Positions 3,791 through 25,900 of a stretch of 64,000 bases of DNA are shown one piece after another (within the stretch, counting starts at the first letter, position 1; every line of letters starts with the position of its first letter). Source of the DNA: Iphione sp. A-MEVVRFRX5 (Eukaryota); NCBI GenBank assembly GCA_976226885.1, contig OZ320319.1:36580001-36644000 (forward strand). Reading direction: 5' to 3'. Under the pieces are notes generated by a model that had not been told where the DNA came from, did not search any database, and saw only the letters and a list, made by a program, of their open reading frames with translations. Made by a program: the position numbers and the translations under genes.

Positions 3791-4100
3791 GGACAGTTCG
3801 ACATTTAACCGACTGTAACGAGTAGCCTATAGTCGACGTGCACTGGAACGCAACTGCTGAAGGACAGCTTGCCTGGCGACATCAGGACTTTCTATTCCGG
3901 CTCCGCGTCTAGTTTGTCTTCTCGTCCCCTCACACAAACAGTACGGAGAACAGTGCTCTTATATCCACCGCTTCGAAACTGCTCGCCGTTGCATCTGCTG
4001 GTGTTAACTATATACCTCGCTCCCCCGTGAACCCCTTAGCCTAATCTGACTTTGGCGCTATTCTCTGTGGACGACATCCACGTCGTTGCAGTTGACGATC

Positions 4101-4166
4101 ATGGCGAGTCACCGTTTTCACCAACACCCCACACTGCTGATGTCTCTTCGACCTGACGATGACAAG
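4101..4166 (+). CDS. Candidate first coding exon of an unidentified host gene (MASHRFHQHPTLLMSLRPDDDK)
   Basis: atcATGG start, 22 open codons, consensus donor AAG|GTAAGC (phase 0), in a CpG-rich island. No homology recognised. Confidence 0.4.
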
Positions 4167-7100
4167 GTAAGCCGCAAACTAGTGTGATACGGTGGACAGG
4201 CGCAGCCCACCGAGATCAAGGATAAAGGAAGGACGCAGGTGGGAGAGGCAAGCGAGTAGTATAGACAGTCGGTGCTTTTTGCCAGGTATAACTTACGAGG
4301 CGCGCGGTCGGCGGGCTGCTGGCGTGGCCAACTTGGTGCTCCCCGGTTCTGCCGCCTGTCAGTTGCTGCAACCACCACCACCGCTGCCACCATCACCAAC
4401 ACCAACACCACCATCAGCAGTCATTCATTGTTCCTTTCGTTCTACCGCTACATCTAAACTCTATATTCGTCGAATTTCGATGGTTTCTCCCTCAAGCCGA
4501 AGCCGGTACCATTTCGAGCAACGAACGCTTTTTTAGGAGGTCCTTTTCTCGTAATAGTTCGTGTAGGGTTATACATACATAATATCCTCGGGCCCTCCCG
4601 GACATTGTTACCTCGAAAGTGTCTATCTCGCAACCTGGAGTCATCTCAAAGTCCCAGAGGGTGGGTGCCTGAACTACCAAAGGAAGAGAAAGGGCCTTGA
4701 AGTATTCATGGTCATCACCCCCGGCTTGCGCATTAATTACACATGAGTCGGTATACTCCTTTGGGGCGATGGTTCCTGCAAACAACCAGCCCCTTTTATG
4801 TGTTCTTACTGTTGCTTTCCGGCACCTAGTGGGGCGTATGTATACACGCGAAACTGGTTACCTTCCTTGCTGCACCGAGATTGCGTAGCCTTGGCGGCAT
4901 CGATCAGCGCCTGCTCAGATTCATCGGTTACCGCTGTACGTGGTCCTCTGAATGTTTTACGTTATTACCATCTAGGATTACCAATTTGTCGATCACTATT
5001 TCAGGAGCTTAAAGACCCCCTTGAACCGAGATTCCCATCATGGGGTGTAGCCAGTTCTGCCGCTCTGCGCAGTAGACACTACATGTGTTTTGTTTTTGCC
5101 AAGGCGCCCACTCGCTGATATAACTTAATCGCAGTTATTTTTACAACGAATTGGGCGGAAATGACGTAAAGCCTACGAAAAAGGCAAAACTGCTAAATTT
5201 TTGGAGATAATACGCGAGAAAGAGTCATGTGAGTGTGACAGGCGCAATTATACTCCTCGCTGACCAAGGTGCGTATGTACCTGAAGGGCACACGCGCCAC
5301 CATGTTGCTATAAAGTACAGTTGTACAAAAGTGTGTTTTTGATGTGATCGTTCCTAAGAAATCTGTATTGAAGAATTTACGCAGGCGCCTTTGCATCTTG
5401 AAGCCACGCCCTCGCCCCAGTAGTTTTTACATAGATTTCTTTTCGGGCATCAAGGCAGACTGTGTTGAAAGATATCAGGTAACAGCAGGTCCAAAATTAG
5501 GTATTGATTATTGACTAGTCAGCGAAATTTTAGAGTGGTTTCATCCTGGCCTAAACAGGGCTCATCGATATTAGTTGACTTACACGTCACATTCAGGCAT
5601 GTGGCCTTAATACACCTACCCCTTCGCATACCTGAAGATAACCTGAGAAGTACTCCCTTATATGGTGTCTCGATTATTGTCTTACTGGAATTTATTACGA
5701 CGTTCCCTTCTTCCTAACGAGTCAATGGGACGTTGTCATCTTGACTATCAGATGATACACACTACCGCTCTCAAGTACATTGCGGCAACCGAAAATGTGT
5801 GAATTTATTATCGTAAATATCATTTGTTTTCGTCGGAAGAACTCCACCGACAGAGACCAAAAAAAAACCCATTTGCATTCCAAATCTGTGTCCTGTTCAA
5901 GGAAATCCAATTGACTCTTGAAGTTTGCCGGTTTGGCTGTTTATACTTGTTTTTTCACTTTTACAGGTTTTGAGTCATTTCCAGTCAGCTTTTCCTGTCG
6001 TCGGTCTGTAATGAGTCCGATTTTTGAATCGCCAGTAACTCACAATACTATTCATTACAAACCTCTTAGGTCCGCTCCGATCCCTTTTTCGTCGGCCATC
6101 TTAGCATGGTTTTAGTGTCGATCCACTCCGTACATCCTAACAACGACACGTTTGATGTTGATGAGATCGGCAGATAAATACAACAAAGATGGGACGATTC
6201 CATCCAGCATTAACACGCTTTTATCATCCGCAAATTGCCACCTTCACCTGAAGTGTTGCGCTGGCCGCATCGAAGGACTGTTGTAATACAGTTCGTCTGA
6301 CAAGGTCCGCTTTTGCTGGCCTAACTTGAAAGGGAACTGCCCAATCTAGGTTTTCTCTTGTTATTTTGCGAGACAAGGGTGACGTTAAGCCTTCACCTCA
6401 TCATACAATCGACCACTTCTCTTGTCAGTTGATTATAGATGTGGTGAAGTGCCACTTCTGACAGTATTGTTAGCCTTTGAAGAACTGAAGCCCATTCATG
6501 ACCTCCGACCCCCGGGTCGGTACTGTTAGATAAGTTTTCTTTTTAACAAGTTTGGAATAAAACTAGTGCTTCTACAGAGAAAAACTAAGCACAGCGTGCC
6601 ATATCATGCTTCATGCGTTCGTTTGTCTTCATGAAAGAATGTTCTTTGATTTGATTGTTGTAACTATTGGGACTGGTCGAGTATACCAAACTGAAACGTA
6701 TCCTTGGCGTGGATGACCTTTATTTTCCCAGCCAAGGTTAAATTTCTGCAATGTAGTGTACATGTGTTCCCTTTTTATGACTTTTACCCATGTCAGTTGG
6801 CACTTTCCCAACGGTTATCCTGTTATTGTTCGATTGCCATTAAGATCATATCTGCGTTCAGTTAATGGGATATATTGATTTAGACAGCTCGTCTGAAAAG
6901 CAAATCTGGATCATCTTAATCTGGATGTCCTCATATGACATATATTTTACCTTTATTTCCTCGTTAACATACATATAAATACTTAATCAAAGTAACTAGT
7001 TTTCATCTCCTGGTACGGATTCTAACTTTGCACACTCCTCATCGTAAAACGTGCATATTTTTTCCGCGTTGTCTTTGGGAAAGAAGACTGCAGCAATTAG

Positions 7101-7374
7101 TAGAGGTCACCGGTAGGTGACCTTTACGTAGACTAAATGACTGTGTTTTCTCTCTGAACTTCGGGTATTCTGATGATTTGTTACATCATATGTGGGTAGA
7201 TTGTGGGTGGATGGTGGGTTGATGCCTTCCCTTAGGCTTTCGGTGATACTATCTCTTTTTAATAACAGTTTACTTTTAGTAGTCATCTGTTCATATCTCT
7301 GTATGAAAAACTCCGGCAGGAGGTACCCCCTCCGGTTCACTGGCAAGTGGTCCCAGATGTTCCGCTAACAGCTC

Positions 7375-7481
7375 TTCTCTCTCTGTCTCTGTCTGTCTGT
7401 CTGTCTCTGTCTGTCTGTCTGTCTCTCTCCCCTACCTCCCCTGCCTTCCCTCCCTCCCCTTCATTCTTGTACGTCTCTCTC

Positions 7482-7512
<31 letters not shown>

Positions 7513-7520
7513 ATCTCTCT
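7375..7520. repeat. Compound (CT)n/(TGTC)n microsatellite
   Basis: Visible in the sequence. Confidence 0.9.
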
Positions 7521-8798
7521 CGCCAGCAGCCTTCAGCACCCCTTAAACCTGCTGTCGATTGCAACAGTTTTCTTATCGTTAAAAAATTTATGGCAACTAA
7601 AGGTTTATAGCATAACTTCAAAATATTTTCAGTATCATTACCGTTCGGCCCCACGGTACTGACTTTTTACCTTCTTAGGTAGCTAAATGAGCAGTCAGAG
7701 GGGCTTTGATCGACCAGTGTACAAGTCCTAGTTTCACATTCATTGACATCTCGTCTCCTGAAATATATTTCAATAAATTAATCGTTATTGATAAACATTT
7801 AGTTACCTTCATATCAACTGTATGGTTTGATTGTTTTTTTAATGAGTACGAAAAAACGTCATCTTTTATGCTCTGTGGTACAATATGAGTTGCTTCTTGT
7901 GAAACGCGTCCTATACATTCTATTGTGCTAAAATATTTTCATCATCCCCCCTAGTTTTGCTCACTTTTGAGACGATGTTGAATTCGACTCAAAAAAGTAT
8001 CAAAGGTACATGCCAGGAAACTAATTTCAAGGATATTTTGTTTCACTCTGCTGCCTTGAAAAAAATAACAGTATACACGGACCTATATGGAAGAGAGTCC
8101 ATGTATTGGAGGTCTGACTACGAATAAACTCTCTCAGCCCAATGTAACAAGTCTCATTTACTGTATGTGGCAGCGAAGAAGCCTTTCAACAGACTGGTCA
8201 TTTCCAAATCTGCAGCTGTCTGTAAGCAGATACACTGCGCCCAAAATAGCCAACATGTGCGCCAACCCTTTTCTTACCTGTATCCACATCTATAGGTGGA
8301 CCTCTGGTAGCCGCTGCTGTCAGCATCTCCGACCAATTCTCGCACGTGCACCTTCTAGTCTGAGCATCCGTCTCAGCGAGGACCTGCGCTCGCTGCCCGA
8401 ACCGGTTTTATTTATCCACTAAAAGTACACCCGGAGCGACCAGAACCAGCCCGAACCATCGGTTGTCCGCATCTGCCCACCTACCCCCCCCCCCCACCAA
8501 CCCCCGGTTGCCAACTTCAGAATAACATAAGTATGATGAATTCAAGAAATAGTAATAGTTTTAAAAATAATATCTATTCAACCATATGGTGGAATAATTC
8601 ATACAGCGCCTCTAATTATGGAAATATAAATTCGGCAAAATGATTGGTTTTGTCAGAAATTGCTCTGAGGTAACATGTTAACGTTCGATCCGGCACAGGG
8701 GGTGGTCAAGGTACAACTTGGACTGGAGGAGCCAGCGTTCAACGACACCAAGGGTCAAGGACTAAACGGGAACTCGTCGAGCACCACATGTGCATGTA

Positions 8799-8976
8799 TA
8801 GTGGAAGGCCACCTTAGGGACACATCTCCAATAGGTACATGCCTCTAATGGGGACACATTGAGGAACAGATTCTGTTTGCCCCATATTATATGAAGTCAT
8901 TAATAGGGACACGTTTCAGTTAGGGACAGTTTTGGAAAGAACTAAGGGTGGTGTCCTGATTAGAGACTTTCTACTA
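8799..8976. mobile_element. MITE with imperfect terminal inverted repeats and TA target duplication (Tc1/mariner-type non-autonomous element)
   Basis: Left end TAGTGGAAGGCCACCTTAGGGACAC versus reverse complement of the right end TAGTAGAAAGTCTCTAATCAGGACAC. TA at 8797-8798 and 8977-8978. Internal repeated GGGACA motifs. Confidence 0.65.
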
Positions 8977-11900
8977 TACATGTGAACCCTCACTCGGTGA
9001 CAGCACGTACAGTCAGTGAAAACAGGCTACTCATCCTCTCGTTTGTTCTCTCGTTTTAACATTGAGGAAATTTTCCACCATGAACGTTCCTTTATGAAAG
9101 ACAACCCTTTGAACAACGGGATTGTCCGGTCAACTCTTAGTATTGAAAGTCATAAGACGAGGATCAGATGCTTGATTATTCTATATGTAAAACCATTTAG
9201 CCGTTTCCTCAAAGAGCCAAACCTTGTTTTCAAGCCGTCGATTTAGGCGCACGCACTAAATGCAAAAGCGAACGTATCGAGGTTGTCGAGTGGGTTTTTG
9301 GCGCTTTGCAACATAAAACATCATCCTGTCACAGTACTACTTGGGTAACGTGATTGTCGTCTAATGGCCTTTAAGTAACAGGGCCTCCGAAAAATAGCCT
9401 GAATACAGCCAGCCTGTGTTGTTTTGTAAGACACACCGCTGTGATCGTGTGCTTCCGATAGTTAGATATATCGATCCCAGGAGACTTTGGAGGTCTCTTC
9501 CAGACACGTTTGTCGAAGCATTGCTCACCGCGGCGGCCTTGTTTGTAGACTAACCACCACACAGAAGGTTCCGTCGCCAAGGTCGTCTCTTTGAACTGTC
9601 AGCAGTCCTGAATGTTTGACACTGTCATTGGATCAGATACAAGTAGCCAGCCCTTAAAAAAACAAAAAAATCCAGATCATCATCATCCTTCTCACCAGGA
9701 TTGGCTCTTTGAGGAAACAGTTAAATGGCCAGTTGTTCATCGTGGCAGCAGTTTGATATTTCATTATTTTGTAAAGATTCCTGTGAATAAGTCCATACAT
9801 ATAGTGGGAGATCAATTCAAGGAAACCGCTGCGCCGGGAATAACCGTACGGATTTCTAAATTTCTGAACGCGCAGGGGGGCACCCTCGAACAACACAATA
9901 TTAACGAAAGCAATCAGTGCGGGAAGGTGATTGTGTGACATCTGCCACCCCATCACCCCCCCTTGAAAATCAGGAAATGGGAGATTATTCCCTCGATCGG
10001 ACGCTGAATGAGAAGGCCGCATTCTTGTTTTAGCTTAGGTGTGCGTGTGGCTCCATGTCAGTACAACCGGGTCATTGGCAGAACAGTTCTCCAATTAGTG
10101 GCCAAACACGAGAAGGTACTCAGTGCGGCGCACGGGCCAGGTAACACTGCAACCACGGCTTGGTCATTTATTAGCCATCGCAGGGACCTCTGTCGTTATG
10201 CAGAACAAGAGTACCGGGCTCCACAGATTTCCCTTGCTTTGGAGAACTGATGATAACTAGTTATCTTTTGAATATCAATGTTGCTTGGTTATTTACTTTG
10301 AATCTTCGCTCTCTGTGTTCAGAGGGACGTAAAGTGGTATTTAGACGGTCCGTTCTCCTCGCCTCCTTAAAAATAGCAGGTCGCTTTGAATTGGTCTTTA
10401 GCATGGTTATGCGGAAAGGGATCAAGGAAGTCCCGTCCATCAAAATATTTGTTTTCATCTAGTGATTTGTTTGTGTTTTACTGCGTATTTTGCCATACAC
10501 ATTATGGACTGATGTGAACAGGCCACAATGCAATATCCTCAAAGATTCGAAGAGGGGTCCATGGTATGAGTCAATCTGGATCAGAAATGTTATCAATATA
10601 TTTTTACTTAATCCGGATCCGAAACACTTCAAAAATGCCTACAGGCATGATTGAATATTGATTTGTGTCTCCCTCGGGATATAGATCCGCGTGATAAGTA
10701 GATTGTAAAGGGAGCATTGTATTCACTACTTTAGCAGTAGAAATTGTACTATCTGGGATACTGAAAGTGTCAATATCCATACCTACATCCTTTAATCTTT
10801 CCTTTCAAAGATATGACTGTTAAATAGTTAAGCTTTTTGGGATAGGGGTATTGGAGTATTTTATACCGTTCCCTCCTCCCCCAAGGCCTCTGTTATCAGA
10901 CTGTTTTCCTATTCATTTGTAAGCCCACAGCAATGTGAACTTTTTTTTAGTGTAGGTGCCTAATGCATTGTTTTAGTTCTACATCTACTGCATTTGGAAG
11001 TAACGATATTCAAACATCAATATCGATGGAACACTTTTGCTAATATTGCAGTTGGTTTTATATTTGAGGATCTTGAGGTATTCCTCTTTGATTAAAGTGC
11101 TAAACAGAAGAGCAGTGTACTCTTGACTGTTTTACCATTGACTGTCTTTTTTACAGTAGGTACGTATTATCAAGATACATGTATAGTATGATACACATGC
11201 ACTTGTATTCTTTTCTTTAAAAAAATCTGTGCAATGTACGAAAAAGTTATCGCGTTTCACGATTTTCTTTCAAAAGGAGCAGTACTCATGAGAACTGGGT
11301 TATTTTATTTTCGTCAAATAGTAACGTGGGCGTCATATTTATTGCAAACCACGTGGGTCAACAAAAAGTGCCCAGACTCGACTTTTCTGTTGATGATAAT
11401 ATCCCTCATCTGCTGGTATTTGCCCCCGGACGGCAGTCAGTAAAATATTAGTCATTAAACTCGGCTTGCATTTCATACTTGTGACACGTATTCCTGCTCG
11501 AGATCAGAAATAAAGGCAATCCATATGAACGCAGGAGAATAAGGTCTCGCAAGCACGTGATCGATGGTGTGCGGGCGAGACCTGGCCCTGTCAGTGAGAG
11601 GCTGTATAACAAGTTGGAGGGCTGATTTATACACAGCCACAACGTTTTATCTCAGGGAAGGCCTAAATGACTCCTTTTTTTGATGGGAGAAAACGTGATC
11701 TTGAAGTGTCTGAGTACTTGAACAGTCCATCTTTAAGCGCAGGCACAGTTCATTCCTGGGAACGCGTACACACATGTGCCTAAGTAACCATCTAAAAAGT
11801 TACCCATGAAGAATCCTGTACTACTCCCGGCTGTGTCAGCAGAGGCCTTTGTTTTCCAACAGATCCTCCAATCTCTCTTCTGTCAATCTAATATGTTGCC

Positions 11901-12805
11901 AATACAATTTACAACTCGTTTTTTTTTAAAACCTAATAATTGCTCTCATTGATGCTGCGATTAATTAAAGAGGAACAGCGGTTTGGGTGTCAGGTCTACA
12001 TGTGGGGACCGACAGATAAATTAATTCATCAGCATGGCTGTAAGTTTCCGTAGCCGTGTGCGCTGAGTTCTGTTGTCGGGGTTCACAGCGGTGACGGCCG
12101 TGTACGGTGGCCGGTTAATAACCACGAGCCACTGTTTGATCTCCGTATAGCGAACCGGAGGTGGTTTTATCGTGGACTTCCCGCCGTCCCGGCGAATGAG
12201 CTTTCATGTCGAGTCTTAATCTAAAGAAGAATCCGCTGGCCAATAAGCCCGTCAGCCGCTCCTTTGAAGAACAGCCGCCTTACCCAGAAACCCTTTGTTG
12301 GTAATAAGAAGACCATTTCATTAAAAAAAAGCAACCAGCCGAAATAACACGGGAAGCAAAGCGGATAGGGAATGCAAACCAGTGTACGGGTATCACTTCT
12401 AGGATATGCGACCAAATGCCACACTATGATAGCGTCGGGTGCTATTTATGTTAGCGAAAAGAATGCTATGTGTATACCTAGGTGTGTCTGACATATCAAA
12501 GGCTGTGAGGACGTCAAGACCAGTTTTCTTCGTGATGTTTTTTTCCGTACGGAGATGGTCGATATTTTTTTTAGCAGAAAATGCGAGAGGGAACACCATA
12601 GCTTCGGCAAAGAGAAATCACAATATTTGAAGTGAATAGATATTGTTTTTGTACACCTTTTGTTTTTGATCCAAACGTTTTGTGGTCTGCTGTGTCAGTG
12701 TTTTGCTGTAAATACCTCTTAGTGCATTTGTCATGATTTTCAATAAGACGAATCTTCAAAGGCACCACCGTCTATCGTAATCTCAAATGTCATTCAACCG
12801 GATGC

Positions 12806-12893
12806 CTTTTGCAGCAAAGTAAACATTCAGTTATAGCGGAAATTATGTCTTTTGCAGCCAAGTAAACATTCAGTTATAGCGGAATTTATGTCT
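12806..12893. repeat. 43-bp tandem duplication (2 copies)
   Basis: cttttgcagcaaagtaaacattcagttatagcggaaattatgt at 12806 is repeated at 12849 with two substitutions. Confidence 0.9.
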
Positions 12894-17635: not shown

Positions 17636-19129
17636 ATGACAAGATCAAAAGCACTGAAACATACAGAAAAGGACAAAAAACTGCCAAAAAAGGGAACCGA
17701 ACCGAAAGAAAGTGAGAATGACGATGATATCCTACTAACAGAGGAAATTTCAAAGACAAATTTGAACCAAACGACACTACAGGATGGGGATACCGAGCGG
17801 AATCACCCAACATCGCCCAATCCAACGGGGGGACACGGCATCAGTGACCGGTCCCTGACCGCCGTGGACCGCACGGTCCAAGATCTTATTGACCACAACA
17901 CAGCAGCCCTAAAACTACACTCAGTGGCTTTGAACAACATTCTACAAACCGAACAACAAGTGTTGAATGAACTGAAGGGGCTTCGAGACGATTACCACAA
18001 GAACAGAAAAGTAAGTGAAACTCTGATTGAAAAACTGTCCAGGGAAAATAATCTCCTCAAGGAACAACTTGATGCGGCTATGGCTCGAATCAAGGCACTT
18101 GAAAATGCAAGAATCCCTCCACAACAGGAACAAATTGATTTAAACCCTGGCATTCCTCAGAACAATGAAATCAGGGGGGGAGTAGTCGATGAACTGTCGG
18201 AGGAGGTTAACGACAAGAGGTGGAATCTCATCGCCCAGGGAATCCCAGAAGATAAAGCCCTTGACTTGTACAGTGAAGTAAGTTCCCTACTGAACTATCT
18301 AGACCCATCGATTGAGGAAGAGGACATATTCAACATCGAACGTATAGGCACGTACAAGGAAGGCAGGGAACGAGCTATCCTCATTGGATTCAATGCTTCT
18401 CAGGTACGGGACACAATATACCGTAGGAGATTTCAATTAAAATCGAGTCACAAATTTCAAGGTGTCTATCTCCGGGAGGATATTCCTCAGAGTTGTCGAC
18501 AGATCTACCAAAATCTACAAAATATTGCTGCGTTAGGAAGGAAAAATGGCATGAAAACAAGTGTGTGTGGTCTAGTTCTACGGATTAATGGTCACCCATA
18601 CAAACACACCGAGCTTGATCAGCTACCGAAGGGATTATCCCTCGAGGCTGCAAACACTCAAGAATCCGACGACCTGGTGGCGTTTCGAGGAGCAAGCTGT
18701 AAACTGTCCATGACGTATCCCACAGAATTGGATTACGAGGGAGTAAGGTATACTAGCTGTGAACATGCCTTCCAATCGTCCAAGGCCCAAATGTGTGAGG
18801 ACGATGCAGCAGTAGAGAAACTGAAGAGCGTTTCAAATGGTCTAGCGGCTAGACGCGTCGGAAACCTCGTTACTCGCACAGCTAAATGGAACAAGAAGGA
18901 AAGTGCTACACTATATGAAATCCTCAAACTGAAATTTGTAAAAGACGAGTTCAAGGAGGCCTTGCTGGCTACTGACGATAAGGACCTCATAGAAGTAAGT
19001 ACTGACTCTATAATGGGAAGTGGTTGCCACTTATATGATGAGCGTCTCCATAATGGTCAATACCCCGGAAAAAATCTTGTTGGAATGGCCCTGATGTGGC
19101 TACGTGCTGAGCTCAGAGAATCCCACTGA
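17636..19129 (+). CDS. LINE ORF1 protein: disordered N-terminus, coiled coil (~aa 76-158), L1-ORF1p-like RRM/CTD (~aa 194-325), C-terminal NADAR/YbiA-like domain (~aa 347-494)
   Basis: 497 aa intact ORF. The RRM-like pattern KRWNLIAQGIPE...ERIG...RAILIGF...VRDTIY...VYLRED matches ORF1p motifs. NADAR pattern: FRG..LS..YP..EG.RY.SCEHAFQSSKA..ARRVG..W..LKLKF..LLAT..LIE..D..GSG..GKNLVGMALMWLRAEL. Confidence 0.88.
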   Translation: MTRSKALKHTEKDKKLPKKGTEPKESENDDDILLTEEISKTNLNQTTLQDGDTERNHPTSPNPTGGHGISDRSLTAVDRTVQDLIDHNTAALKLHSVALNNILQTEQQVLNELKGLRDDYHKNRKVSETLIEKLSRENNLLKEQLDAAMARIKALENARIPPQQEQIDLNPGIPQNNEIRGGVVDELSEEVNDKRWNLIAQGIPEDKALDLYSEVSSLLNYLDPSIEEEDIFNIERIGTYKEGRERAILIGFNASQVRDTIYRRRFQLKSSHKFQGVYLREDIPQSCRQIYQNLQNIAALGRKNGMKTSVCGLVLRINGHPYKHTELDQLPKGLSLEAANTQESDDLVAFRGASCKLSMTYPTELDYEGVRYTSCEHAFQSSKAQMCEDDAAVEKLKSVSNGLAARRVGNLVTRTAKWNKKESATLYEILKLKFVKDEFKEALLATDDKDLIEVSTDSIMGSGCHLYDERLHNGQYPGKNLVGMALMWLRAELRESH

Positions 19130-19240
19130 ATGTATATAGGATCGACCAATACTAACTCTGATACAGAATATCGACACCTATAGACATATTACTTGGAGAG
19201 ATTCTCTACTGTTTCCTGGGAAGTAATTAATGGTAAATGT

Positions 19241-19262
19241 ATTTATTTTCGGTCATTTACAG
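19241..19262 (+). promoter_or_regulatory. Putative 3' splice acceptor 2 nt upstream of the middle-ORF ATG
   Basis: atttattttcggtcatttacAG|aaATG. Confidence 0.55.
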
Positions 19263-19264
19263 AA

Positions 19265-19864
19265 ATGAATCCTATGGTCAGATATGTGGCGGATGAAACT
19301 GGTGTGGAATTAGCCTATCACCTACAAGAAACGTATGGTGATAGGATACTACTATCGTCTCATATATACCCAGGCCTAACCCCAGAATATCTTGCATCTC
19401 ACATCGCTACCTTCCCTGACGGCCCATTCAACATCACTGTAATCCGCCTAGGGCTGCATTCCTATGCCAGAGAAGATGACGGCCAATGGAGTTCCAGGTG
19501 TACTGACGACGACACAAACCTGGAGGCAAGCGTCCCGTCAACCCTGGTGTCAATCAACAATCACCTCAATGCAATGGGACACACTGTTATCTACCTACCT
19601 ATTAATGGGGTATCCTTGCTAACCACAGATAATGCTGAACAGGACCTGCTGAACGCCCAAATTTGCCACTTCAACTTGGCGGTAGCAGAAGTGAATCTGT
19701 TGGGTGGTCACACAACGCCTGAAACGGCCTGGCCACTGCATGACTTTACCAATGGGGATATCATATTCCGCCCCGAAGAACTGATTGGGGGTGTCAGAGT
19801 TAAACATCACATAGCCTACAACTGGGCTTGCAATGTAGGCGACTATGTTCTCGGACTACTATAA
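19265..19864 (+). CDS. Middle ORF (199 aa from first ATG), probable degenerate SGNH/GDSL esterase-like fold
   Basis: Open frame 19184-19864 with first ATG at 19265. Motif spacing resembles SGNH blocks: YVADE (for xxGDS), YPGLT, VIRLGLHS (for vihxGxND), GGVRV (for DGxH). Lies between ORF1 and ORF2 of a LINE group known to carry ORF1 esterases. Confidence 0.5.
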   Translation: MNPMVRYVADETGVELAYHLQETYGDRILLSSHIYPGLTPEYLASHIATFPDGPFNITVIRLGLHSYAREDDGQWSSRCTDDDTNLEASVPSTLVSINNHLNAMGHTVIYLPINGVSLLTTDNAEQDLLNAQICHFNLAVAEVNLLGGHTTPETAWPLHDFTNGDIIFRPEELIGGVRVKHHIAYNWACNVGDYVLGLL

Positions 19865-19952: not shown

Positions 19953-21875
19953 ATGAAGGGTCGTGGTATTATATTTTGGAATATCAGAAGCTTTATTCCC
20001 AAAATTGATGATGTGAGGTTACTACTAGATAACGTCGAACCTTATATCTGTTGTATCACTGAAACATGGTTATCACCCATTATGACTAATGACATACTAA
20101 ATCATGAAAATTACAAATTATTTCGCCAAGATAGGGTATCTTCCGTAAAAAAACGAGGTGGAGGTATACTTGTATATGTTAGGAAGACGGAGTCTATCAC
20201 TGAATTCCCAGACCTGTCGTGCAATTCAGATAGCTGTGAATCGATCAGCCTGTTACTCCATTCTCAACACCGTAAACCACTAGGGGTCACCGTTGTCTAT
20301 GCACCGCCATCTGGTTCCAAGAGTGATTTAATAAAATACCTGGAAACTAATACTACAGCATTGAAACACAAGGGGGCTAAAGATATCATTATAGGGGGGG
20401 ATATGAACATTGACTGGGCGAGAAAAAATCCAAACTCCTCCAATCTTGAAAAAACCTGTTCAAAATTTGGTCTGAAACAATACATTAATGAGCCCACAAT
20501 AATTCATGAATCAAGCAAATCAATAATCGATCTAATTTTCACCAATATGCAGAACATTACAGAGGTTGGGACTATTGATGTCAATGTAAGTGACCACAAG
20601 CCGGTTTTCATTCTGAATAAGAAAATCAGGGAAAGGAAGAAGAAATATTCCTATATAGGTAGAGACTGGAGCAAATATGACAAGAGTGCCCTACGAGACC
20701 ATCTCCAACCTGTAATTGACTATCATGAATCTTATAGTAACCTCCCACTAGCTGACAGGTGGGATACTCTCCAGAGTGCCGTTGTTGAAGCGGTTAAGGT
20801 CCTGTGTCCAGAGAAAGCTAAAACTAGAAAATCTGGAACTAATTGGATGACACCTGAACTCCTTGATGCAATTCGCAACCGTGATTATTTCCTAAAAAAA
20901 TACACCACAACCAAAAACATTGATGACCTTAGAATTTCAAAATTTTATAAATCAAAAGCCAAAAAACTTACCAAGCAAGCAAAAAGAGATTTCTACAGAA
21001 AAATCTTAGGAAATTGCACGACTGCGAAGGATTATTGGTCCTGTATTAACTCACATGTCCTAAACAAAGGTAAAGGTGCGACCAAAATCAATCTAGTTGA
21101 GAACGATGCTAGTCAATCAGATAAAGACATTCCCGAAATTTTTAATGCTATGTTTGTCTCTCAGGCAGAAAAACTTTGTCATGACATCACTCTGCCATAC
21201 CATGAAGGGGAACCTGAATGGGACCTCAGACCGGTGACTCATCAGTCTCTTGTAAAAAAGATACTCCAGGTTAAATCCAAAAAACCAAGTGGCATCGACG
21301 GTGTTCCAACCACTGTACTCAAGGATGCCCTACTAATAACCTCAGAATTCTTCCTAACCATTGTTAATGAAATAATCGTAACAGGTAACTACCCAGACCA
21401 ATGGAAGGTTGCACGGATTACCCCTCTTCACAAAAAGGGATCAAGGGAGAAAAAGGAAAACTTTCGACCGATTGCAATACTTCCTATAGTAGGGAAGCTA
21501 GTTGAGGCTATCGTTCATGAGCAGATGGTTGACTATCTGGAGATCAGTAGATTCTATTGTCGTGAGCAGCATGGATTCCGGCGCCATAGAGGGACGAGCA
21601 CAGCAATTGGAGTGTATTTAAGAGACATTTATTCAGCGATCGACGAAGACAGATATGTGGCCAGTATACTATTCGATTATTCTAAAGCTTTCGACGTAAT
21701 CAACCATGAGCTTATCATAAACTGCCTCAGACAATCTGGTATGGGTTCAAAGGCACTAGGCTGGGCATCCTCTTACTTAGAGGGGAGGAGCCAATTCGTT
21801 CGTTGTAATCATGTCAACTCAATTCCCCTGAGTGTTAAGCAAGGCGTTCCTCAGGGGAGCCTAATGGGCCCCTGA
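19953..21875 (+). CDS. LINE ORF2, 5' part: apurinic-type endonuclease and N-terminal part of reverse transcriptase
   Basis: APE motifs IIFWNIRS, CITETWL, RQDR..GGGILVYV, VYAPP, GGDMNID, IDLIF, SDHKPV. RT motifs WKVARITPLHKKG, NFRPIAILP, QHGFR, FDYSKAFD, QGVPQGS. Ends at a premature TGA caused by a frameshift. Confidence 0.95.
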   Translation: MKGRGIIFWNIRSFIPKIDDVRLLLDNVEPYICCITETWLSPIMTNDILNHENYKLFRQDRVSSVKKRGGGILVYVRKTESITEFPDLSCNSDSCESISLLLHSQHRKPLGVTVVYAPPSGSKSDLIKYLETNTTALKHKGAKDIIIGGDMNIDWARKNPNSSNLEKTCSKFGLKQYINEPTIIHESSKSIIDLIFTNMQNITEVGTIDVNVSDHKPVFILNKKIRERKKKYSYIGRDWSKYDKSALRDHLQPVIDYHESYSNLPLADRWDTLQSAVVEAVKVLCPEKAKTRKSGTNWMTPELLDAIRNRDYFLKKYTTTKNIDDLRISKFYKSKAKKLTKQAKRDFYRKILGNCTTAKDYWSCINSHVLNKGKGATKINLVENDASQSDKDIPEIFNAMFVSQAEKLCHDITLPYHEGEPEWDLRPVTHQSLVKKILQVKSKKPSGIDGVPTTVLKDALLITSEFFLTIVNEIIVTGNYPDQWKVARITPLHKKGSREKKENFRPIAILPIVGKLVEAIVHEQMVDYLEISRFYCREQHGFRRHRGTSTAIGVYLRDIYSAIDEDRYVASILFDYSKAFDVINHELIINCLRQSGMGSKALGWASSYLEGRSQFVRCNHVNSIPLSVKQGVPQGSLMGP

Positions 21876-22741
21876 TGTTCTCTATTGTTATTAATTCTCT
21901 CCCGAAAGCTTTATCTATAGCTAGCGCAGTGCTATACGCTGACGATCTAACGGTTACCTGTGTAGCGGCCAATGCACTAACACTGCGACTCAAGCTTCAG
22001 CGTACTATCAAGGATGTACAGACCTGGTCTCAGGCAAATGGCCTAACACTGAACACTGAAAAAACCCTGTACCTATCGTTTGGAAAAACTAACCAATTTG
22101 CCCTTGACCTATCCATTGACAACAAACCGATATCTAGGGTGACGAATTGCAAGCTACTAGGGTATATTGTTGATGACAAATTATCATGGAGGCCAATGGT
22201 GGAAAAGACCAGGCGACTAATCAGGCAAAGATCAATTGGTCTGTCAAAAATGGTAAAATTTGTTCCCTTCAGAGATAGACTCAGGCTATATCATGCATTT
22301 GTATTGCCCTGCCTTGACTATGGACTCCCATTTATTGTGAATGCTAGTAAATGTCTAGTGGATGATCTACAGGTTGAAATGAACCGTGCGAGCAAATTAG
22401 TCCTCTTAGGTAGTATGAAAACGATGATGTCAGCCAATACACTACGTCGAAAAGCACGGCTTGAAACAGTCAGTGAAAGGGGTAATAAGCAGCTACTTAT
22501 GTTAATTCACAGGCTTCAATGTATCACCGAATGCAAAATACGTCAACACGCAAAACATCTTAGGAGAAGCAGTTTTGGTAATATGCAATTAAAACAGCCA
22601 AAGAAGAGCCTGTATCAAAAGTCATTTTGGTATAAGGGCATTGCTGCTTGGAATATGGTCCCCTATCCAAGTAAATCAAAATTATCAGTGCAGGAATTCA
22701 GAAGAATTGTGTATAAACAGCACCACGTGCAATCACGCTAA
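21875..22741 (+). CDS. LINE ORF2, 3' part (RT catalytic YADD and C-terminal region), shifted out of frame by a 1-nt deletion
   Basis: Contains VLYADD, LNTEKT, LGYIVDDKLSW, FVLPCLDYG and a terminal W-N motif. Adding one C to the C4 run at 21869-21872 restores G-P-L-M-F and a continuous ORF of about 929 aa. Confidence 0.93.
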   Translation: MFSIVINSLPKALSIASAVLYADDLTVTCVAANALTLRLKLQRTIKDVQTWSQANGLTLNTEKTLYLSFGKTNQFALDLSIDNKPISRVTNCKLLGYIVDDKLSWRPMVEKTRRLIRQRSIGLSKMVKFVPFRDRLRLYHAFVLPCLDYGLPFIVNASKCLVDDLQVEMNRASKLVLLGSMKTMMSANTLRRKARLETVSERGNKQLLMLIHRLQCITECKIRQHAKHLRRSSFGNMQLKQPKKSLYQKSFWYKGIAAWNMVPYPSKSKLSVQEFRRIVYKQHHVQSR

Positions 22742-22911
22742 CTGCAAACTACCCTGTACTATGTAAATAATGTATATACTCATGTGTCATACTCCTGTGT
22801 CTATACAAAGTCGCTAAACTAGTCAAATGTACCCACTAATGGCCATTGTATTTATCAGTTCATTTTTTCTTTTTCCTAGTATTTCCTATTTCCATCTATT
22901 CACGGGAATAT

Positions 22912-22982
22912 CTCGATGTATTTCGCAGAATTGCATTGAGCAGTGAATAAATCATATTTCAATTCAATTCAATTCAATTCAA
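22912..22982 (+). terminator. LINE 3' end: stem-loop, AATAAA and (TTCAA)5 tail
   Basis: CTCGATGTATTTC-GCA-GAATTGCATTGAG (22912-22940) pairs as a 13-position stem with two G:U pairs and one mismatch. AATAAA at 22946 is followed by five TTCAA units. Confidence 0.75.
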
Positions 22983-25900
22983 TAATTAAACTCAGTTTTC
23001 TGCCTTACTCATGTAGTCATTCAAACTATTTATCAAAATCACTCTAGAACAATAACCTAATGGTTTGAGACGTGATTTCTCTCTAACGTCAAACACATGC
23101 TAAGTGCCAGGATAACGCACTGAGATTACTGCTCCTAAATTAATACAGAATGTTAAGTGCTGGTTGTGAAATTAAACTCAAAACTGATGATGTGTGTCTG
23201 TATTTGGGTACAAACGCTACCTTGATAATGGAAGAAAAAATTCTAGCTGCAACTGCCATTGCCATGGTGAGTCATGTGACTTCATTTGTTGTTGTAACAG
23301 ACTAAAAAGTCCATAGAAGTTGCTGACAACAAAAAAGCGAAATTAAACCTATATGTGAATTAAAGGAAGGAGAAAGCTGTTAAATGCAGTTGAGAACTGA
23401 TTTGGCTTTATTACAAACATAAAGAACACATGCTTAGTACGTTGCAACATGTCTTACACTAGTTTTCGGGAGGAACATAATTCCTTCATCAAATGTGCTT
23501 GTGTGGGATTGCAAATATCAAATGAGCTTTATATACTGGTGTCTTTCATTTTGAAGTGCTTTCTGTAAACAAAGTCAGCTAATCACGGGTGGGTTTACAG
23601 TTTGTAGTACTGCTCATGTGAGCAAGTGATCCGATTGCTTATAAATATACATTTGTAAACTTTGAGAATCCTAGAATAAAGTATGATGACAATATTCTAC
23701 CAAAGTTGAATTGTTATGATTTAAATTTTTTTAGCATAATTATAAGTGAATGGTTGTAAACCAAAGGTTCACATATGACCGTGCAGTCCGATAAAGTGTA
23801 AACCGAAATGTATATTCCCTGTCAAGGATAAGAATGCTATTACGGCCAGAGGCTTGCAAATTAATGGATGATGGCTTCACACCAAGTGCAATACAAAAGA
23901 AAATGTTGATGTATATGAAGTTCAAGGCTTTTAACAATATGATTTCTTGCATTTTATTTCCCAGTATTTGCTCAAGACCATACGCAGTATAATTAATAGC
24001 AGTTCGTGTATTAAGGTGTAACTGAAAACCTGTTGTTCCTACTGATACTATCTTGAACGTGTGAAGACAGACCCCGTCTAATTGTCATCGGCATGGCTTC
24101 TCAACTGATCCATTATAGCGCCATAGATGGTAATAGAGACTCCATAGTGAACCATCAATAATTGTTTCCGTATACATGTCTTCATGTGTGTCAAAATGAC
24201 CGGTTATAATTCGAAAGGTTTCCTCCATCTAGAGGGAGGTAAAAATAAATTCTGTTGAGTGTATTCAGTTGTAGGTGGGGTTTCACCGTATGTGGCTTAA
24301 GTGCGGCGTGTATACATGTGCACATGGTGCATCAGGCATCATTTACCAGACTGTGTGCGGCAATAGTTGATTTGATCTTTTTAAAACGTGGCAAGAACGT
24401 AAACGTAACGTGAAACTCCCCTACAACCAACAAACAACATACAACATATTAGATTTGACATTAGAACAATCATTGGTGTGGAGGGAGACTAGATGTACTA
24501 ACTCCAGCTGTGCGTTTCCCATTTGGAAGGAGGCGTTTCACAGGGGGATTCAAACGCAGATAGACTGCGTTATTGCGCTTTTTTGATCAACGGATTGCTG
24601 TCAACCCCTTCAGTACATCCATACCCTGTGGATGGAACCTGTCACTCTGCAATTTTTCTCTAGCAAAGCAAATGCAAATGGGTAACGCACTGTGGTGCTT
24701 CACTCAACTTGTTCCATTGTACGCTTAAAAAGATAAACAGCAAACGAACGTTCTCCTTTAAATGGCTTGTAGACCTGCTTGGTGTTCCTTTGACTTAAAG
24801 CAATAATGAGTTGCATTTTATCATCTCTCCATATCTTACCTCATGGGTCTATTAAAAACATTGCATGTCAGAAAAATAGCTGTAGACCATTAGCAACCCC
24901 CCCCCCAAAATAAAAATATATATTTGTGTTTCTGGTAACATGTTGAAAAAGGTGAGGGTCAGTAGATAGGTTGTTTTTCTTTCTTTTTTCAATGAAAATT
25001 CATACTGACAGGAACAGATGTGTATGATGATATCACTTCTCCTGTTTACATTTTAATGGAACTGGTGTTATGAAAGCTGGTGACGTAAGGAACAAAGTGG
25101 TGTATTCCTTGAGTATTCATTACCAAGATATTGGCAAAACAATACCGAAATAATATGTTCCATTGGTATCAAAATCAGGGTTTGTTGGGTTACCGGAAGT
25201 AGACCTTTTTGATACGCCTTATTCAACTGCAAACTCACGTGTAAACTACACTTCGGAAAGATTAGTTATCACTTAATTTCACTATTATCTACTTTGTGTC
25301 GGAGTACTGTGAAACTGACACTGAGAGCTATCTTTTAACTATTACAGGAAATGACATTACAGAATCTGTAATGCTGTATATGAATAGGATTCAAAATGAC
25401 AAACTTTGTTTAATCCCCACTTCAGAAATTTACAGTCTTCCCTCTGTAATTGACATCTTCTGTTGATGTTGATTTAGTCGGTTATATGGGATTGACAGTA
25501 GTTGAAGTATTTTGAGCTTGATTTGCATATTTGGTTTTCGCAAAAGTCAGTCCCTAAAGCGGTATCATCAGTCTTACAATCGCCAGTTACGTATGGCACC
25601 ACCGCAGTTGTCAATAAATTCCGTATTATGCAACGAATTCATACGAAAATAATGATTCTATACTATTGGGTATATATATACTTGTTTTATTCTTAACATA
25701 GATTATACACCTTGAGTAGGTTTTTTTCTACTATTTATGATATGCTTCACCAATTTTGTCCACTTGGACAGAGTGAACACCGCACATTCTGCAGTATCAT
25801 TGGAAATTACTCAGTGTTGTAGTCCCCCTTTGTATCACTGGTTTCCCCCTGATTACCACTCCTTAGAAACCATGAAACAGAGCAGGTCCTACTTTGAGGG

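What the first reader, a model, noticed from the sequence alone, without database searches (positions are those of the whole stretch)
17636..19129. Retrotransposon ORF1 fused to a NADAR (YbiA-like) domain: a LINE that may carry its own ADP-ribosylation eraser
Seen: an intact 497-aa ORF1 in which the coiled-coil/RRM/CTD module runs in frame into a ~150-aa C-terminal domain (nt ~18674-19117) with the NADAR signature (SCEHAFQSSKA; E376-H377, Q380, K383; LIE453; D457; GKNLVG..LM.LR). Established: NADAR proteins are N-glycosidases. E. coli YbiA hydrolyses reactive riboflavin-pathway intermediates, and NADAR antitoxins reverse DarT1-mediated ADP-ribosylation of guanine in DNA; the domain also occurs in phages and some large RNA viruses. 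The accessory ORF1 domains I know for CR1/L2 elements are esterase, PHD and zinc knuckles; I am not aware of NADAR among them, but could not search. Inference: ORF1p coats the element RNA, so the domain would sit on the RNP or nascent cDNA and could strip ADP-ribose added by a host nucleic-acid ADP-ribosyltransferase, acting as a transposon-encoded counter-defence. Caveat: the usually conserved Trp in D-x-x-W-G is Met here (DSIMG), so activity may be altered.
Basis: partly seen in the sequence, partly recalled or inferred. Interest (0 to 1): 0.93.

Follow-up and report, generated by a model that had tools for sequence, protein, structure and literature searches.

The report
LINE retrotransposon ORF1 carrying a NADAR enzyme
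A jumping gene (LINE) in this animal-type genome has fused an enzyme domain that, in its characterised relatives, strips ADP-ribose off DNA and RNA bases onto its own RNA-coating protein; the fusion is real, old, widespread and conserved, has been mentioned only once in passing in the literature, and has never been tested for function.

Summary
ORF 17636-19129 (497 aa) is intact. Residues 345-497 are a NADAR domain (Pfam 79.7 bits, cut-off 35.1) whose model matches solved NADAR/YbiA structures. The N-terminal part is an L1-type coiled-coil/RRM/CTD ORF1p.

The catalytic Glu/Lys/Glu (E376, K383, E453) are present. The fusion is not private to this copy. An exhaustive search gave 902 clusters at E<=1e-10, and nearly all of the best 150 span RRM/CTD plus NADAR. 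In 151 aligned sequences the catalytic glutamates are kept in 97-98%, and NADAR is better conserved than the RNA-binding core. Six other elements link ORF1-NADAR to EN/RT, and one family has seven near-identical intact copies.

The element looks CR1-group, not L1/Tx1. Between ORF1 and ORF2 lies an SGNH-esterase-fold ORF that has lost its catalytic residues here. This copy has an ORF2 frame break and unusual Met at two conserved NADAR positions.

Prior art exists: a 2025 paper notes NADAR in ORF1 of oyster LINEs. The counter-defence idea is plausible and untested. NADARs erase G/C-ADP-ribose on ssDNA and ssRNA, and CARP-1-type writers exist in marine invertebrates.

The parts
17636..19129 (+). 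ORF1 (497 aa, intact): disordered N-terminus, coiled coil, RRM, CTD and NADAR
   Evidence: ORF listing; family profile against PDB; AF2 model and Foldseek
17873..18109 (+). Coiled-coil helix of ORF1p (aa 80-158)
   Evidence: One continuous helix 80-158 in the AF2 model. The profile aligns to the coiled coil of the human L1 ORF1p trimer 2YKP and 6FIA.
18218..18667 (+). RRM (aa ~195-283) and CTD (aa ~284-344) of L1-type (type II) ORF1p
   Evidence: Profile match to 2YKP/2YKO 1.2e-16, 2LDY 9e-10, 2W7A 1e-5; Foldseek 2YKP TM 0.61, 2W7A TM 0.65
18668..19126 (+). NADAR domain, YbiA subtype (aa 345-497). Catalytic E376, K383 and E453 are present. N359M and W460M are unusual.
   Evidence: Pfam 79.7 bits; TIGR02464; 8BAU/2B3W by sequence and fold; residue mapping to E43/K50/E125 of P. 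nicotianae NADAR; family residue counts
19265..19864 (+). Middle ORF (open frame from 19193, first ATG at 19265): SGNH/GDSL-hydrolase fold, with the Ser/Asp/His catalytic positions substituted in this copy
   Evidence: AF2 pLDDT 71.8, pTM 0.73; 97 PDB SGNH/GDSL matches at E<=1e-3; hhalign to esterase ORFs of related elements E 3-5e-5, probability 67-72%; alignment of the motif positions; no Pfam hit
19953..21875 (+). ORF2 first part: apurinic-type endonuclease (aa 9-218) and N-terminal half of the RT
   Evidence: Pfam Exo_endo_phos, Exo_endo_phos_2 and RVT_1
21875..22741 (+). ORF2 second part in another frame: rest of the RT (YADD present) and a C-terminal domain with a KS..Y.G...WN..P motif. 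One frame break sits in a C-run at about 21865-21875.
   Evidence: Pfam RVT_1, profile positions 129-204; translation across the junction and the C-terminal sequences
22742..22984 (+). 3' UTR ending in a (TTCAA/CAATT)n short tandem repeat (about 22958-22984), with no poly(A)
   Evidence: Read directly from the sequence

Best explanation
The feature is a young, nearly intact copy of a CR1-group-like LINE with three ORFs. ORF1p is an L1-type RNA-coating chaperone (coiled-coil trimeriser, RRM, CTD) whose C-terminus is a YbiA-type NADAR N-glycosidase. This much is shown: the domain is real, it has the NADAR fold and catalytic residues, and selection has kept it in hundreds of LINE lineages, some of them recently mobile. 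The mechanism is inferred. ORF1p binds the element's own RNA at high density and travels with it, so the NADAR domain would sit on single-stranded RNA, and possibly on the nascent cDNA or the target-site flap. There it would hydrolyse base-linked ADP-ribose (N2-guanine, cytosine), which would otherwise block translation, reverse transcription or second-strand synthesis. On this view it is a built-in eraser of nucleic-acid ADP-ribosylation, comparable to phage NADARs that neutralise DarT1. The likely writers are host pierisin/CARP-1-type ADP-ribosyltransferases, or ones from microbes. In this particular copy activity may be weakened by Met at two conserved NADAR positions, and ORF2 is interrupted.
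For: The domain and fold are established. The catalytic E43/K50/E125 of P. nicotianae NADAR (PMC11543638) align with E376/K383/E453. Glu at the last-strand position marks the YbiA family (PMC11125620). Family size: 3704 hits, 902 at E<=1e-10, and nearly all of the best 150 span RRM/CTD plus NADAR at 23-34% identity. In 151 aligned sequences E376 is kept in 148, E453 in 147, and K/R383 in 137. NADAR mean pairwise identity is 32.5% against 27.2% for RRM+CTD, with 23 against 8 highly conserved columns. ORF1-NADAR is linked to EN/RT in L001/L002, L003, L004, L005, L012 and L013. Seven copies at least 99.7% identical, with both ORFs intact, lie at different sites. Biochemistry: NADARs of all families remove G- and C-linked ADP-ribose from ssDNA and ssRNA, and CARP-1 homologues occur mainly in Bivalvia and also in Cnidaria, Porifera and other Bilateria (PMC12945103; PMC11209040). 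Parallel acquisitions are known in phage anti-DarT1 NADARs (PMC11825919), invertebrate nidoviruses (PMC11848433 and PMC12377751; Foldseek viral hits) and a Gypsy lineage.
Against: No substrate, writer enzyme or effect on mobility has been shown for any LINE NADAR. The host of this window is unidentified, so the presence of CARP-1-like enzymes there is unknown. E. coli YbiA also acts on small-molecule riboflavin intermediates, so N-glycosidase chemistry does not by itself imply a nucleic-acid substrate. The window copy has Met in place of the pyrophosphate-contacting Trp (W133 equivalent), and Met in place of an Asn that is 92% conserved. It deviates at 10 of 41 conserved columns against a family median of 5. 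The CR1-group assignment rests on hallmarks, not on an RT phylogeny with reference sequences.
Confidence: 0.5

Rival explanations
1. The NADAR domain is a functional N-glycosidase that works on something other than base-ADP-ribosylated nucleic acid. Candidates are NAD- or ADP-ribose-derived RNA end or cap structures (an RNA-processing role, as suggested in PMC12477816), or reactive small-molecule N-glycosides, as for E. coli YbiA.
For: TIGR02464, the riboflavin-intermediate N-glycosidase model, is matched just above its cut-off. The only published comment on LINE/Gypsy NADARs proposes processing of the RNA intermediate. Catalytic residues are conserved, which fits any hydrolytic role.
Against: Every NADAR tested so far, including YbiA-type and eukaryotic ones, removes G- or C-linked ADP-ribose from ssDNA/ssRNA. 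Phosphate-linked ADP-ribose caps are reported as macrodomain, PARG or ARH3 substrates, not NADAR substrates (table in PMC12945103). A metabolite-cleaning role gives no reason for a fusion to an RNA-coating protein kept in more than 100 diverged lineages.
Confidence: 0.2
2. The domain is non-catalytic in LINEs. It would be an ADP-ribose or nucleotide reader, or a structural module. For example it might steer the RNP to PARylated DNA breaks, or help RNP assembly.
For: The junction with the CTD is conserved and confidently modelled as a compact unit (L330/P331/F350 at least 90% conserved; pLDDT 96-97 across the junction). The window copy carries substitutions at ligand-contact positions.
Against: The two catalytic glutamates are kept in 97-98% of 151 diverged sequences, and the Lys position as K/R in 91%. 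That pattern is what selection on catalysis produces. Binding alone would not be expected to give it.
Confidence: 0.1
3. In this particular copy nothing works any more. It is a recently dead insertion whose NADAR, esterase-like ORF and ORF2 are all compromised, so the locus has no present function. This is compatible with the family-level explanation.
For: ORF2 has a frame break. The middle ORF lacks the Ser/Asp/His positions that four relatives retain. M359 and M460 are atypical. No second copy lies in the window, and no close relative is in any searched collection.
Against: ORF1 (497 codons) and the 223-codon middle frame are still open, and the RT keeps YADD. The frame break lies in a homopolymer run, where assembly errors are common. 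Each Met substitution needs two nucleotide changes, which looks more like lineage divergence than fresh decay.
Confidence: 0.4
4. The NADAR part is a host exon or gene fragment captured by a single element copy, or an assembly chimera.
For: None beyond the fact that only one copy is present in the window.
Against: The same RRM/CTD-NADAR architecture recurs in at least 145 clusters less than 50% identical to one another. It also recurs in six other elements next to EN/RT.
Confidence: 0.01

Closest known systems
NADAR-containing ORF1 proteins of LINE families from Crassostrea gigas in Repbase (there labelled Tx1), noted in PMC12477816 (Genome Biol 2025)
   Same: A YbiA-family NADAR domain inside a LINE ORF1 protein, with the role in retrotransposition unknown.
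   Different: The window element and all six sampled relatives look CR1-group rather than Tx1/L1. They have short tandem-repeat tails and no poly(A). ORF2 has no C-terminal CCHC. ORF2 matches R2 better than human L1 ORF2p. Insertion sites are not specific in the one family where seven copies could be compared (L004). Most of them carry an SGNH esterase ORF. I could not obtain the Repbase sequences to compare directly.
Human/mouse L1 ORF1p (type II ORF1p, Transposase_22; PDB 2YKP, 2LDY)
   Same: Coiled coil, RRM and CTD in the same order, homologous by profile (1.2e-16) and by fold.
   Different: L1 ORF1p ends after the CTD. Here a 150-aa enzyme domain follows in frame, and the partner ORF2 is not of the L1 clade.
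P. nicotianae NADAR (8BAU) and E. coli YbiA (2B3W)
   Same: Same fold (TM 0.70/0.71), the same catalytic Glu/Lys/Glu, and Glu at the position that marks the YbiA subtype.
   Different: Those are free-standing proteins. Here the domain is the C-terminal module of an RNA-binding transposon protein. The pyrophosphate-contacting Trp is Met in this copy.
Phage and DarTG1 NADAR antitoxins (anti-DarT1 counter-defence; PMC11825919, PMC11543638)
   Same: A mobile genetic parasite carries a NADAR that could undo guanine ADP-ribosylation of its own nucleic acid.
   Different: Those use Asp (BC4488/DarG1) or His (phage gp30.3) at the last-strand catalytic position. They are stand-alone and have a known cognate writer, DarT1. 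No writer is known here.
Esterase-type (type IV) ORF1 of CR1/L2 elements such as ZfL2-1 (PMC3905857, PMC4120745)
   Same: An SGNH-fold protein is encoded upstream of EN/RT in a CR1-group LINE.
   Different: Here it is a separate middle ORF that co-exists with a type II ORF1-NADAR. In the window copy it lacks the catalytic Ser/Asp/His. A survey of 448 Jockey-superfamily ORF1s found esterases only in vertebrate subgroups and reported no NADAR.
NADAR (often with macrodomain) insertions in invertebrate nidovirus polyproteins (PMC11848433, PMC12377751) and NADAR at the N-terminus of Pol in an Ectocarpus Gypsy lineage (PMC12477816)
   Same: Independent capture of NADAR by RNA-based genetic parasites, several of them in aquatic invertebrates.
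   Different: The carrier protein differs: replicase or Pol polyprotein there, nucleic-acid chaperone here.

Membership tests
NADAR superfamily (Pfam PF08719) | Profile match above the curated threshold | tested here: met
   79.7 bits against a cut-off of 35.1. The family profile matches 8BAU at 1.6e-34.
NADAR superfamily (Pfam PF08719) | [quoted passage not shown] | tested here: met
   The AF2 model (pLDDT above 90 in the domain) gives 8BAU TM 0.70 over 184 columns and 2B3W TM 0.71.
NADAR superfamily (Pfam PF08719) | Catalytic Glu and Lys of the first helix (E43, K50 in P. nicotianae) | tested here: met
   E376 and K383 align to them. They are kept in 148/151 sequences and as K/R in 137/151.
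NADAR superfamily (Pfam PF08719) | ADP-ribose pyrophosphate contacts (W89, D130, W133 and basic residues) | tested here: inconclusive
   W418 and D457 are present. The W133 equivalent is M460, the only Met among 151 sequences. The R79 and R93 equivalents are N410 and E422, at positions that vary across the family.
NADAR superfamily (Pfam PF08719) | Hydrolysis of guanine/cytosine-linked ADP-ribose | not testable with these tools
   Needs a biochemical assay.
YbiA subfamily of NADAR | Glutamate (not Asp or His) at the catalytic position of the last strand | tested here: met
   E453 in LIE aligns to E125 of 8BAU. The criterion comes from PMC11125620. TIGR02464 scores 74.3 against 73.7.
DarTG1 antitoxin NADAR (BC4488 family) | Aspartate at the last-strand position and a neighbouring DarT1 toxin gene | tested here: not met
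   The position holds Glu, not Asp. The neighbours are LINE ORFs.
Type II (L1-type) ORF1p | Coiled coil, then RRM, then CTD, homologous to Transposase_22 / PDB 2YKO | tested here: met
   Profile against 2YKP/2YKO 1.2e-16 over the coiled coil, RRM and CTD; Foldseek TM 0.61; helix 80-158. The single sequence alone does not reach Pfam Transposase_22.
CR1-group (Jockey-superfamily) LINE | ORF2 with an apurinic-type endonuclease followed by an RT | tested here: met
   Exo_endo_phos, Exo_endo_phos_2 and RVT_1.
CR1-group (Jockey-superfamily) LINE | 3' end made of short tandem repeats rather than poly(A) (within the group only Zenon has poly(A); PMC13343379) | tested here: met
   (CAATT)n at about 22958-22984. 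The related L004 family ends in GGCCTTGATAT plus (TA)/(TGATA)n.
CR1-group (Jockey-superfamily) LINE | RT placed inside the CR1 group in a phylogeny with reference elements | not tested
   No reference RT set (Repbase/Dfam) was available. Indirect evidence: the named distant hits are fish RTs with ALKBH8_N and Amphiura PHD-EN-RT proteins. I take the ALKBH8_N hits to be L2-type from memory, not from a test. PDB matches are R2 at 3.6e-12 against human L1 ORF2p at 6e-7.
Tx1 / L1-group LINE | C-terminal CCHC motif in ORF2, A-rich tail, site-specific insertion (criteria from my own knowledge of the clade) | tested here: not met
   No conserved CCHC is present, and the C-terminus carries KS..Y.G...WN..P instead. 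The tails are tandem repeats. Seven L004-family copies have unrelated flanks. L004 ORF2 has no match to L1 ORF2p at E<=1e-3.
SGNH/GDSL esterase (type IV ORF1-like), middle ORF | SGNH alpha/beta/alpha fold | tested here: met
   The model has pLDDT 71.8 and pTM 0.73. It gives 97 PDB matches at E<=1e-3, essentially all SGNH/GDSL enzymes. Caveat: the 4-row alignment used for the model included three esterase ORFs.
SGNH/GDSL esterase (type IV ORF1-like), middle ORF | Catalytic Ser (block I GDS) and Asp-x-x-His (block V) | tested here: not met
   The window reads V-A-D-E-T and G-G-V-R-V where L001, L003, L012 and L013 read (G/T/A)-D-S-R (block I: L001, L003, L013; L012 lacks that part of the alignment) and D-G-(L/V/C)-H-P (block V: all four).

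The most novel reading that the evidence does not exclude
Base ADP-ribosylation of RNA or single-stranded DNA, for instance by CARP-1/pierisin-type transferases, is an unrecognised restriction system against retroelements and RNA viruses in marine invertebrates and other eukaryotes. LINEs, a Gypsy lineage and giant nidoviruses would then each have captured a NADAR eraser as a counter-measure, a eukaryotic analogue of the bacterial DarT1 / phage-NADAR conflict. The LINE version would be delivered by fusion to the RNA-coating ORF1p, so that the RNP cleans itself.
Probability: 0.3. Interest if true: 0.9.

Novelty: new variant of a known kind. Interest (0 to 1): 0.62.

Why it matters
LINE ORF1 proteins are regarded as RNA chaperones with a few known accessory modules (zinc knuckle, PHD, esterase). 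A conserved nucleic-acid de-ADP-ribosylating enzyme on ORF1p would add an enzymatic repair or counter-defence activity to the LINE particle. It would also be indirect evidence that nucleic-acid base ADP-ribosylation acts on mobile elements in animals, where its physiological role is still open (PMC11125620 and PMC12945103 both say so).

The family found here offers a directly testable system. It has hundreds of diverged lineages, catalytic residues that are almost invariant, and a naturally intact and very recently active member. It also warns that some 'animal NADARs' in databases may be transposon ORF1 proteins.

Tried and rejected
1. The word-indexed protein search with ORF1, and again with the 64-sequence alignment, returned only one relative because candidate lists saturated. 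The exhaustive HMMER search was needed.

2. There is no second copy in the window, no exact or close relative on record and none in JGI metagenomes. On the only reachable set of close copies (the L004 family, 7 copies) divergence is 0-0.3% with no differences in NADAR, so the ratio is uninformative. Long-range residue conservation was used instead.

3. Taxonomic origin of the window and its relatives: cluster look-ups gave no names or accessions. Rfam found nothing. The ten largest other ORFs of the window have no Pfam domain. The host therefore remains unknown.

4. No target-site duplication or 5' boundary could be defined for the window element. The sigma-70 promoter scan is irrelevant to a eukaryote.

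5. The long C-terminal tails of a third of the relatives were tested as possible fused esterases. They show no similarity to the esterase ORFs and have no Pfam domain.

6. The esterase ORFs do not reach significance against the PDB by sequence profile or against Pfam (L005 has a sub-threshold Lipase_GDSL_2 hit at 0.008). Only the fold comparison was decisive.

7. Capture of a host exon by a single copy was rejected.
Full report
OBSERVATION. Pfam NADAR (PF08719) matches residues 362-494 at 76.3 bits for the whole ORF. The excised C-terminal 153 residues score 79.7 bits against a curated cut-off of 35.1. NCBIfam TIGR02464, the YbiA-type N-glycosidase domain, is matched at 74.3 bits against a cut-off of 73.7. 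Downstream lie a 223-codon ORF (19193-19864) with no Pfam or NCBIfam match, then an ORF2 with apurinic-type endonuclease and reverse transcriptase. ORF2 is split into two frames at about 21875.

STRUCTURE OF ORF1p. A 64-sequence family alignment (A1), used as a profile against all PDB sequences, gives three informative matches:
- P. nicotianae NADAR 8BAU at 1.6e-34;
- E. coli YbiA 2B3W at 1.8e-28;
- the human LINE-1 ORF1p trimer 2YKP/2YKO at 1.2e-16, covering coiled coil, RRM and CTD.

The AlphaFold model built on A1 has mean pLDDT 83.6 and is above 90 for residues ~190-497. It shows a disordered N-terminus (1-79), one long helix (80-158), an RRM (~195-283), a CTD (~284-344) and the NADAR fold (345-497). 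Foldseek against the PDB ranks 8BAU first (TM 0.70 on the target, 184 columns). YbiA comes next (0.71), followed by the L1 ORF1p trimer (0.61). ORF1p is therefore a type II (L1-type) ORF1p with a complete NADAR domain added in frame. The junction itself is conserved (L330, P331 and F350 at least 90%) and confidently modelled.

ACTIVE SITE. Schuller et al. (PMC11543638) define E43, K50 and E125 of P. nicotianae NADAR, or their equivalents in E. coli C7 NADAR, as the residues needed for hydrolysis of guanine-linked ADP-ribose. In the pairwise alignment to 8BAU these are E376, K383 and E453 of the window protein. Glu at the last-strand position is what separates the YbiA family from the DarT1-associated (Asp) and phage (His) families (PMC11125620), so this is a YbiA-type NADAR.

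The same paper lists W89, D130 and W133 among the pyrophosphate contacts. Here W418 and D457 are kept, but the W133 position is M460. Among 151 aligned family sequences that position is W 117, F 24, Y 9 and M 1, and the single Met is the window copy. N359 of the LSNFYP motif, Asn in 92% of the family, is also Met. Overall the window protein departs from the consensus at 10 of 41 highly conserved columns, against a family median of 5 and a 90th percentile of 9.

NOT A ONE-OFF. The exhaustive HMMER search of 1.84 billion cluster representatives with the whole ORF1p found 3704 proteins at E<=1e-3 and 902 at E<=1e-10. Nearly all of the 150 best align from about residue 190 to 495, that is across RRM, CTD and NADAR, at only 23-34% identity. 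Of 157 sequences held (query included), 151 cover both parts.

Across those 151 sequences:
- E376 is Glu in 148 and E453 in 147;
- position 383 is Lys in 109 and Arg in 28;
- G461, G463, G478, N480 and G483 are nearly fixed.

The NADAR part is more conserved than the RNA-binding core that retrotransposition is known to need. Mean pairwise identity is 32.5% against 27.2%, and 23 against 8 columns have at least 80% of one residue. This is the signature of long-term purifying selection on catalysis.

LINKAGE TO LINE MACHINERY. Genomic context was recovered for several diverged relatives. L001/L002 and L013 come from one Logan sample, L003 and L005 from one ENA assembly, L004 from another, and L012 from a third. 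In every case an EN/RT ORF follows ORF1-NADAR on the same strand.

The L004 family is instructive. Seven copies (L004, L006-L011) lie in unrelated flanks. They are 99.7-100% identical over ~5.3 kb and start at the same nucleotide. Each has an intact ORF1-NADAR of 423-428 aa and an intact ORF2 of 1042 aa (1025 in L011). LINEs with a NADAR ORF1p are therefore mobile now, or were very recently. The copies are too similar for dN/dS (no differences in NADAR).

THE MIDDLE ORF. In L001, L003, L005, L012 and L013 an ORF of about 160-220 aa sits between ORF1-NADAR and ORF2. It carries the SGNH-hydrolase motifs: (G/T/A)DSR near the start, GG(I/V)C in the middle and DG(L/V/C)HP near the end. The window's 223-codon ORF is in the same position.

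The evidence that the window ORF is homologous to these is as follows:
- hhalign to the esterase profiles gives E 3-5e-5 at 67-72% probability;
- its AlphaFold model (pLDDT 71.8, pTM 0.73; only four rows in the alignment, three of them those esterases) has an alpha/beta/alpha layout;
- the model gives 97 PDB matches at E<=1e-3, essentially all SGNH/GDSL esterases or acyltransferases.

At the catalytic positions, however, the window reads ADE-T and GGVR in place of (G/A/T)DS and DGxH. It is an SGNH-fold protein that cannot be a serine esterase.

The element is therefore tricistronic: type II ORF1p-NADAR, then an SGNH-like protein, then EN/RT. I found no description of that combination. A survey of 448 Jockey-superfamily ORF1s lists coiled coil, RRM, CTD, CCHC, PHD, zinc finger/leucine zipper and esterase, with no NADAR, and found esterases only in vertebrate subgroups (PMC4120745).

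WHICH KIND OF LINE. The window element ends in (CAATT)n at about 22958-22984 with no poly(A). The L004 family ends in ...GGCCTTGATAT followed by variable (TA)/(TGATA) repeats. Within the CR1 group only Zenon has poly(A) (PMC13343379).

Several other features point the same way:
- ORF2 has no conserved C-terminal CCHC and carries a KS..Y.G...WN..P motif shared by the window, L003, L004 and L012.
- Against the PDB, the window ORF2 matches R2 proteins at 3.6e-12 and human L1 ORF2p only at 6e-7. L004 ORF2 does not match L1 ORF2p at all at 1e-3.
- The few named distant ORF2 relatives are fish RTs with the ALKBH8_N domain and brittle-star PHD-EN-RT proteins.
- Type II ORF1p is documented in CR1 and L2 clades as well as in L1 (PMC4120745).

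I could not run a reference RT phylogeny, so this is an inference from hallmarks.

STATE OF THIS COPY. ORF1 is intact. The middle frame is open. The RT keeps YADD. ORF2 has one frame break in a run of C at about 21865-21875. No second copy is in the window, no target-site duplication was found, and the 5' end is undefined. No protein above 34% identity exists in the collections searched. I therefore cannot say whether the Met substitutions, the esterase substitutions and the frame break are private to this copy or typical of its family.

PRIOR KNOWLEDGE. Full-text searches for NADAR, YbiA or DUF1768 together with retrotransposon, ORF1 or non-LTR terms found one relevant paper. PMC12477816 (Genome Biol 2025) describes a Gypsy lineage of Ectocarpus with NADAR at the N-terminus of Pol. 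[quoted passage not shown] The bare fact 'LINE ORF1 with NADAR' is therefore published, in one sentence. In the library searched I did not find any of the following:
- the size and age of the family;
- the conservation of its active site;
- its association with CR1-group machinery and an SGNH ORF;
- the existence of currently active members;
- any functional test.

MECHANISM. What is shown: a NADAR domain with a complete catalytic set is covalently tied to a trimeric RNA-coating protein and has been kept by selection in mobile LINEs.

What is established elsewhere:
- NADARs of all four families, including a eukaryotic one and YbiA types, hydrolyse ADP-ribose linked to guanine N2 and to cytosine on ssDNA and ssRNA (PMC11543638, PMC11125620, PMC12945103).
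- Phages use orphan NADARs to defeat DarT1 (PMC11825919).
- Guanine-specific DNA ADP-ribosyltransferases of the CARP-1 type are exclusively eukaryotic. They occur mainly in bivalves and also in Cnidaria, Porifera and other Bilateria (PMC12945103; PMC11209040).
- Invertebrate nidoviruses, including one from the Pacific oyster, carry NADAR, often with a macrodomain. The viral fold library also returns nidovirus and other RNA-virus polyproteins, phages and giant viruses.

What is inferred: on the RNP the domain removes base-linked ADP-ribose from the LINE RNA, the nascent cDNA or the exposed target strand. That would keep them readable by ribosome and RT. I put about 0.85 on 'a catalytically active domain that benefits retrotransposition' and about 0.5 on 'the substrate is ADP-ribosylated nucleic acid and the role is repair or counter-defence'.

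The rivals are another N-glycosidic substrate (RNA end or cap structures, or metabolites; 0.2) and a non-catalytic reader or structural role (0.1, disfavoured by the conserved glutamates). For this copy only, functional death is also possible (0.4, and compatible with the family-level explanation). Capture of a host exon by a single copy is excluded.

VERDICT. I rate it a new variant of a known, barely described kind, with interest 0.62. No contig handled here was taken for human. No N runs occur in the window.

Noticed in passing
window 19193-19864: An ORF between ORF1 and ORF2 has an SGNH-hydrolase fold, but its catalytic Ser/Asp/His positions are substituted. It lies in the same frame as ORF1, separated from it by two stop codons (19127 and about 19181).
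   Followed up: yes
L004 7818-13110; L006 4317-9610; L007, L008, L009, L010, L011: A related two-ORF LINE family has seven full-length copies, 99.7-100% identical, in unrelated flanks. All have intact ORF1-NADAR and ORF2, so the family was active very recently. The 3' end is GGCCTTGATAT plus variable (TA)/(TGATA) repeats.
   Followed up: yes
P0085, P0098, P0074, P0088, P0026, P0127, P0080, P0111, P0028, P0032 (residues after the NADAR domain): About a third of ORF1-NADAR relatives (48 of 151) continue for 100-400 residues beyond NADAR. These tails are acidic and Ser/Thr-rich, of low complexity, and share a short motif of the form DG.LDL.KI..W.LP.L. They have no Pfam domain and no similarity to the esterase ORFs.
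   Followed up: partly
L013 282-3346 (minus strand) and 3887-9097: A three-ORF NADAR LINE lies next to exons of a CLC-type chloride-channel gene on the opposite strand, probably within the gene.
   Followed up: no
P0144 (617 aa): This protein has three tandem NADAR domains and no ORF1p part. It is one of the few non-transposon-like hits among the best 150.
   Followed up: no
window 21865-21875: The only frame break of ORF2 lies in a homopolymer run within the conserved GVPQGS..GP motif region of the RT. It could be a real mutation or an assembly error.
   Followed up: partly
window 12802-12893 and 39520-39556: A 43-bp tandem duplication sits at 12802-12893. A 17-bp repeat at 39520-39556 shares the core CAGTTATAGC with it, which may mark a small dispersed repeat family elsewhere in the window.
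   Followed up: no
L003 9439-10086 and 10087-11468: In this relative more than 1 kb of non-coding, proline-rich-translating sequence separates the esterase ORF from ORF2. This suggests an insertion or decay within that copy.
   Followed up: no
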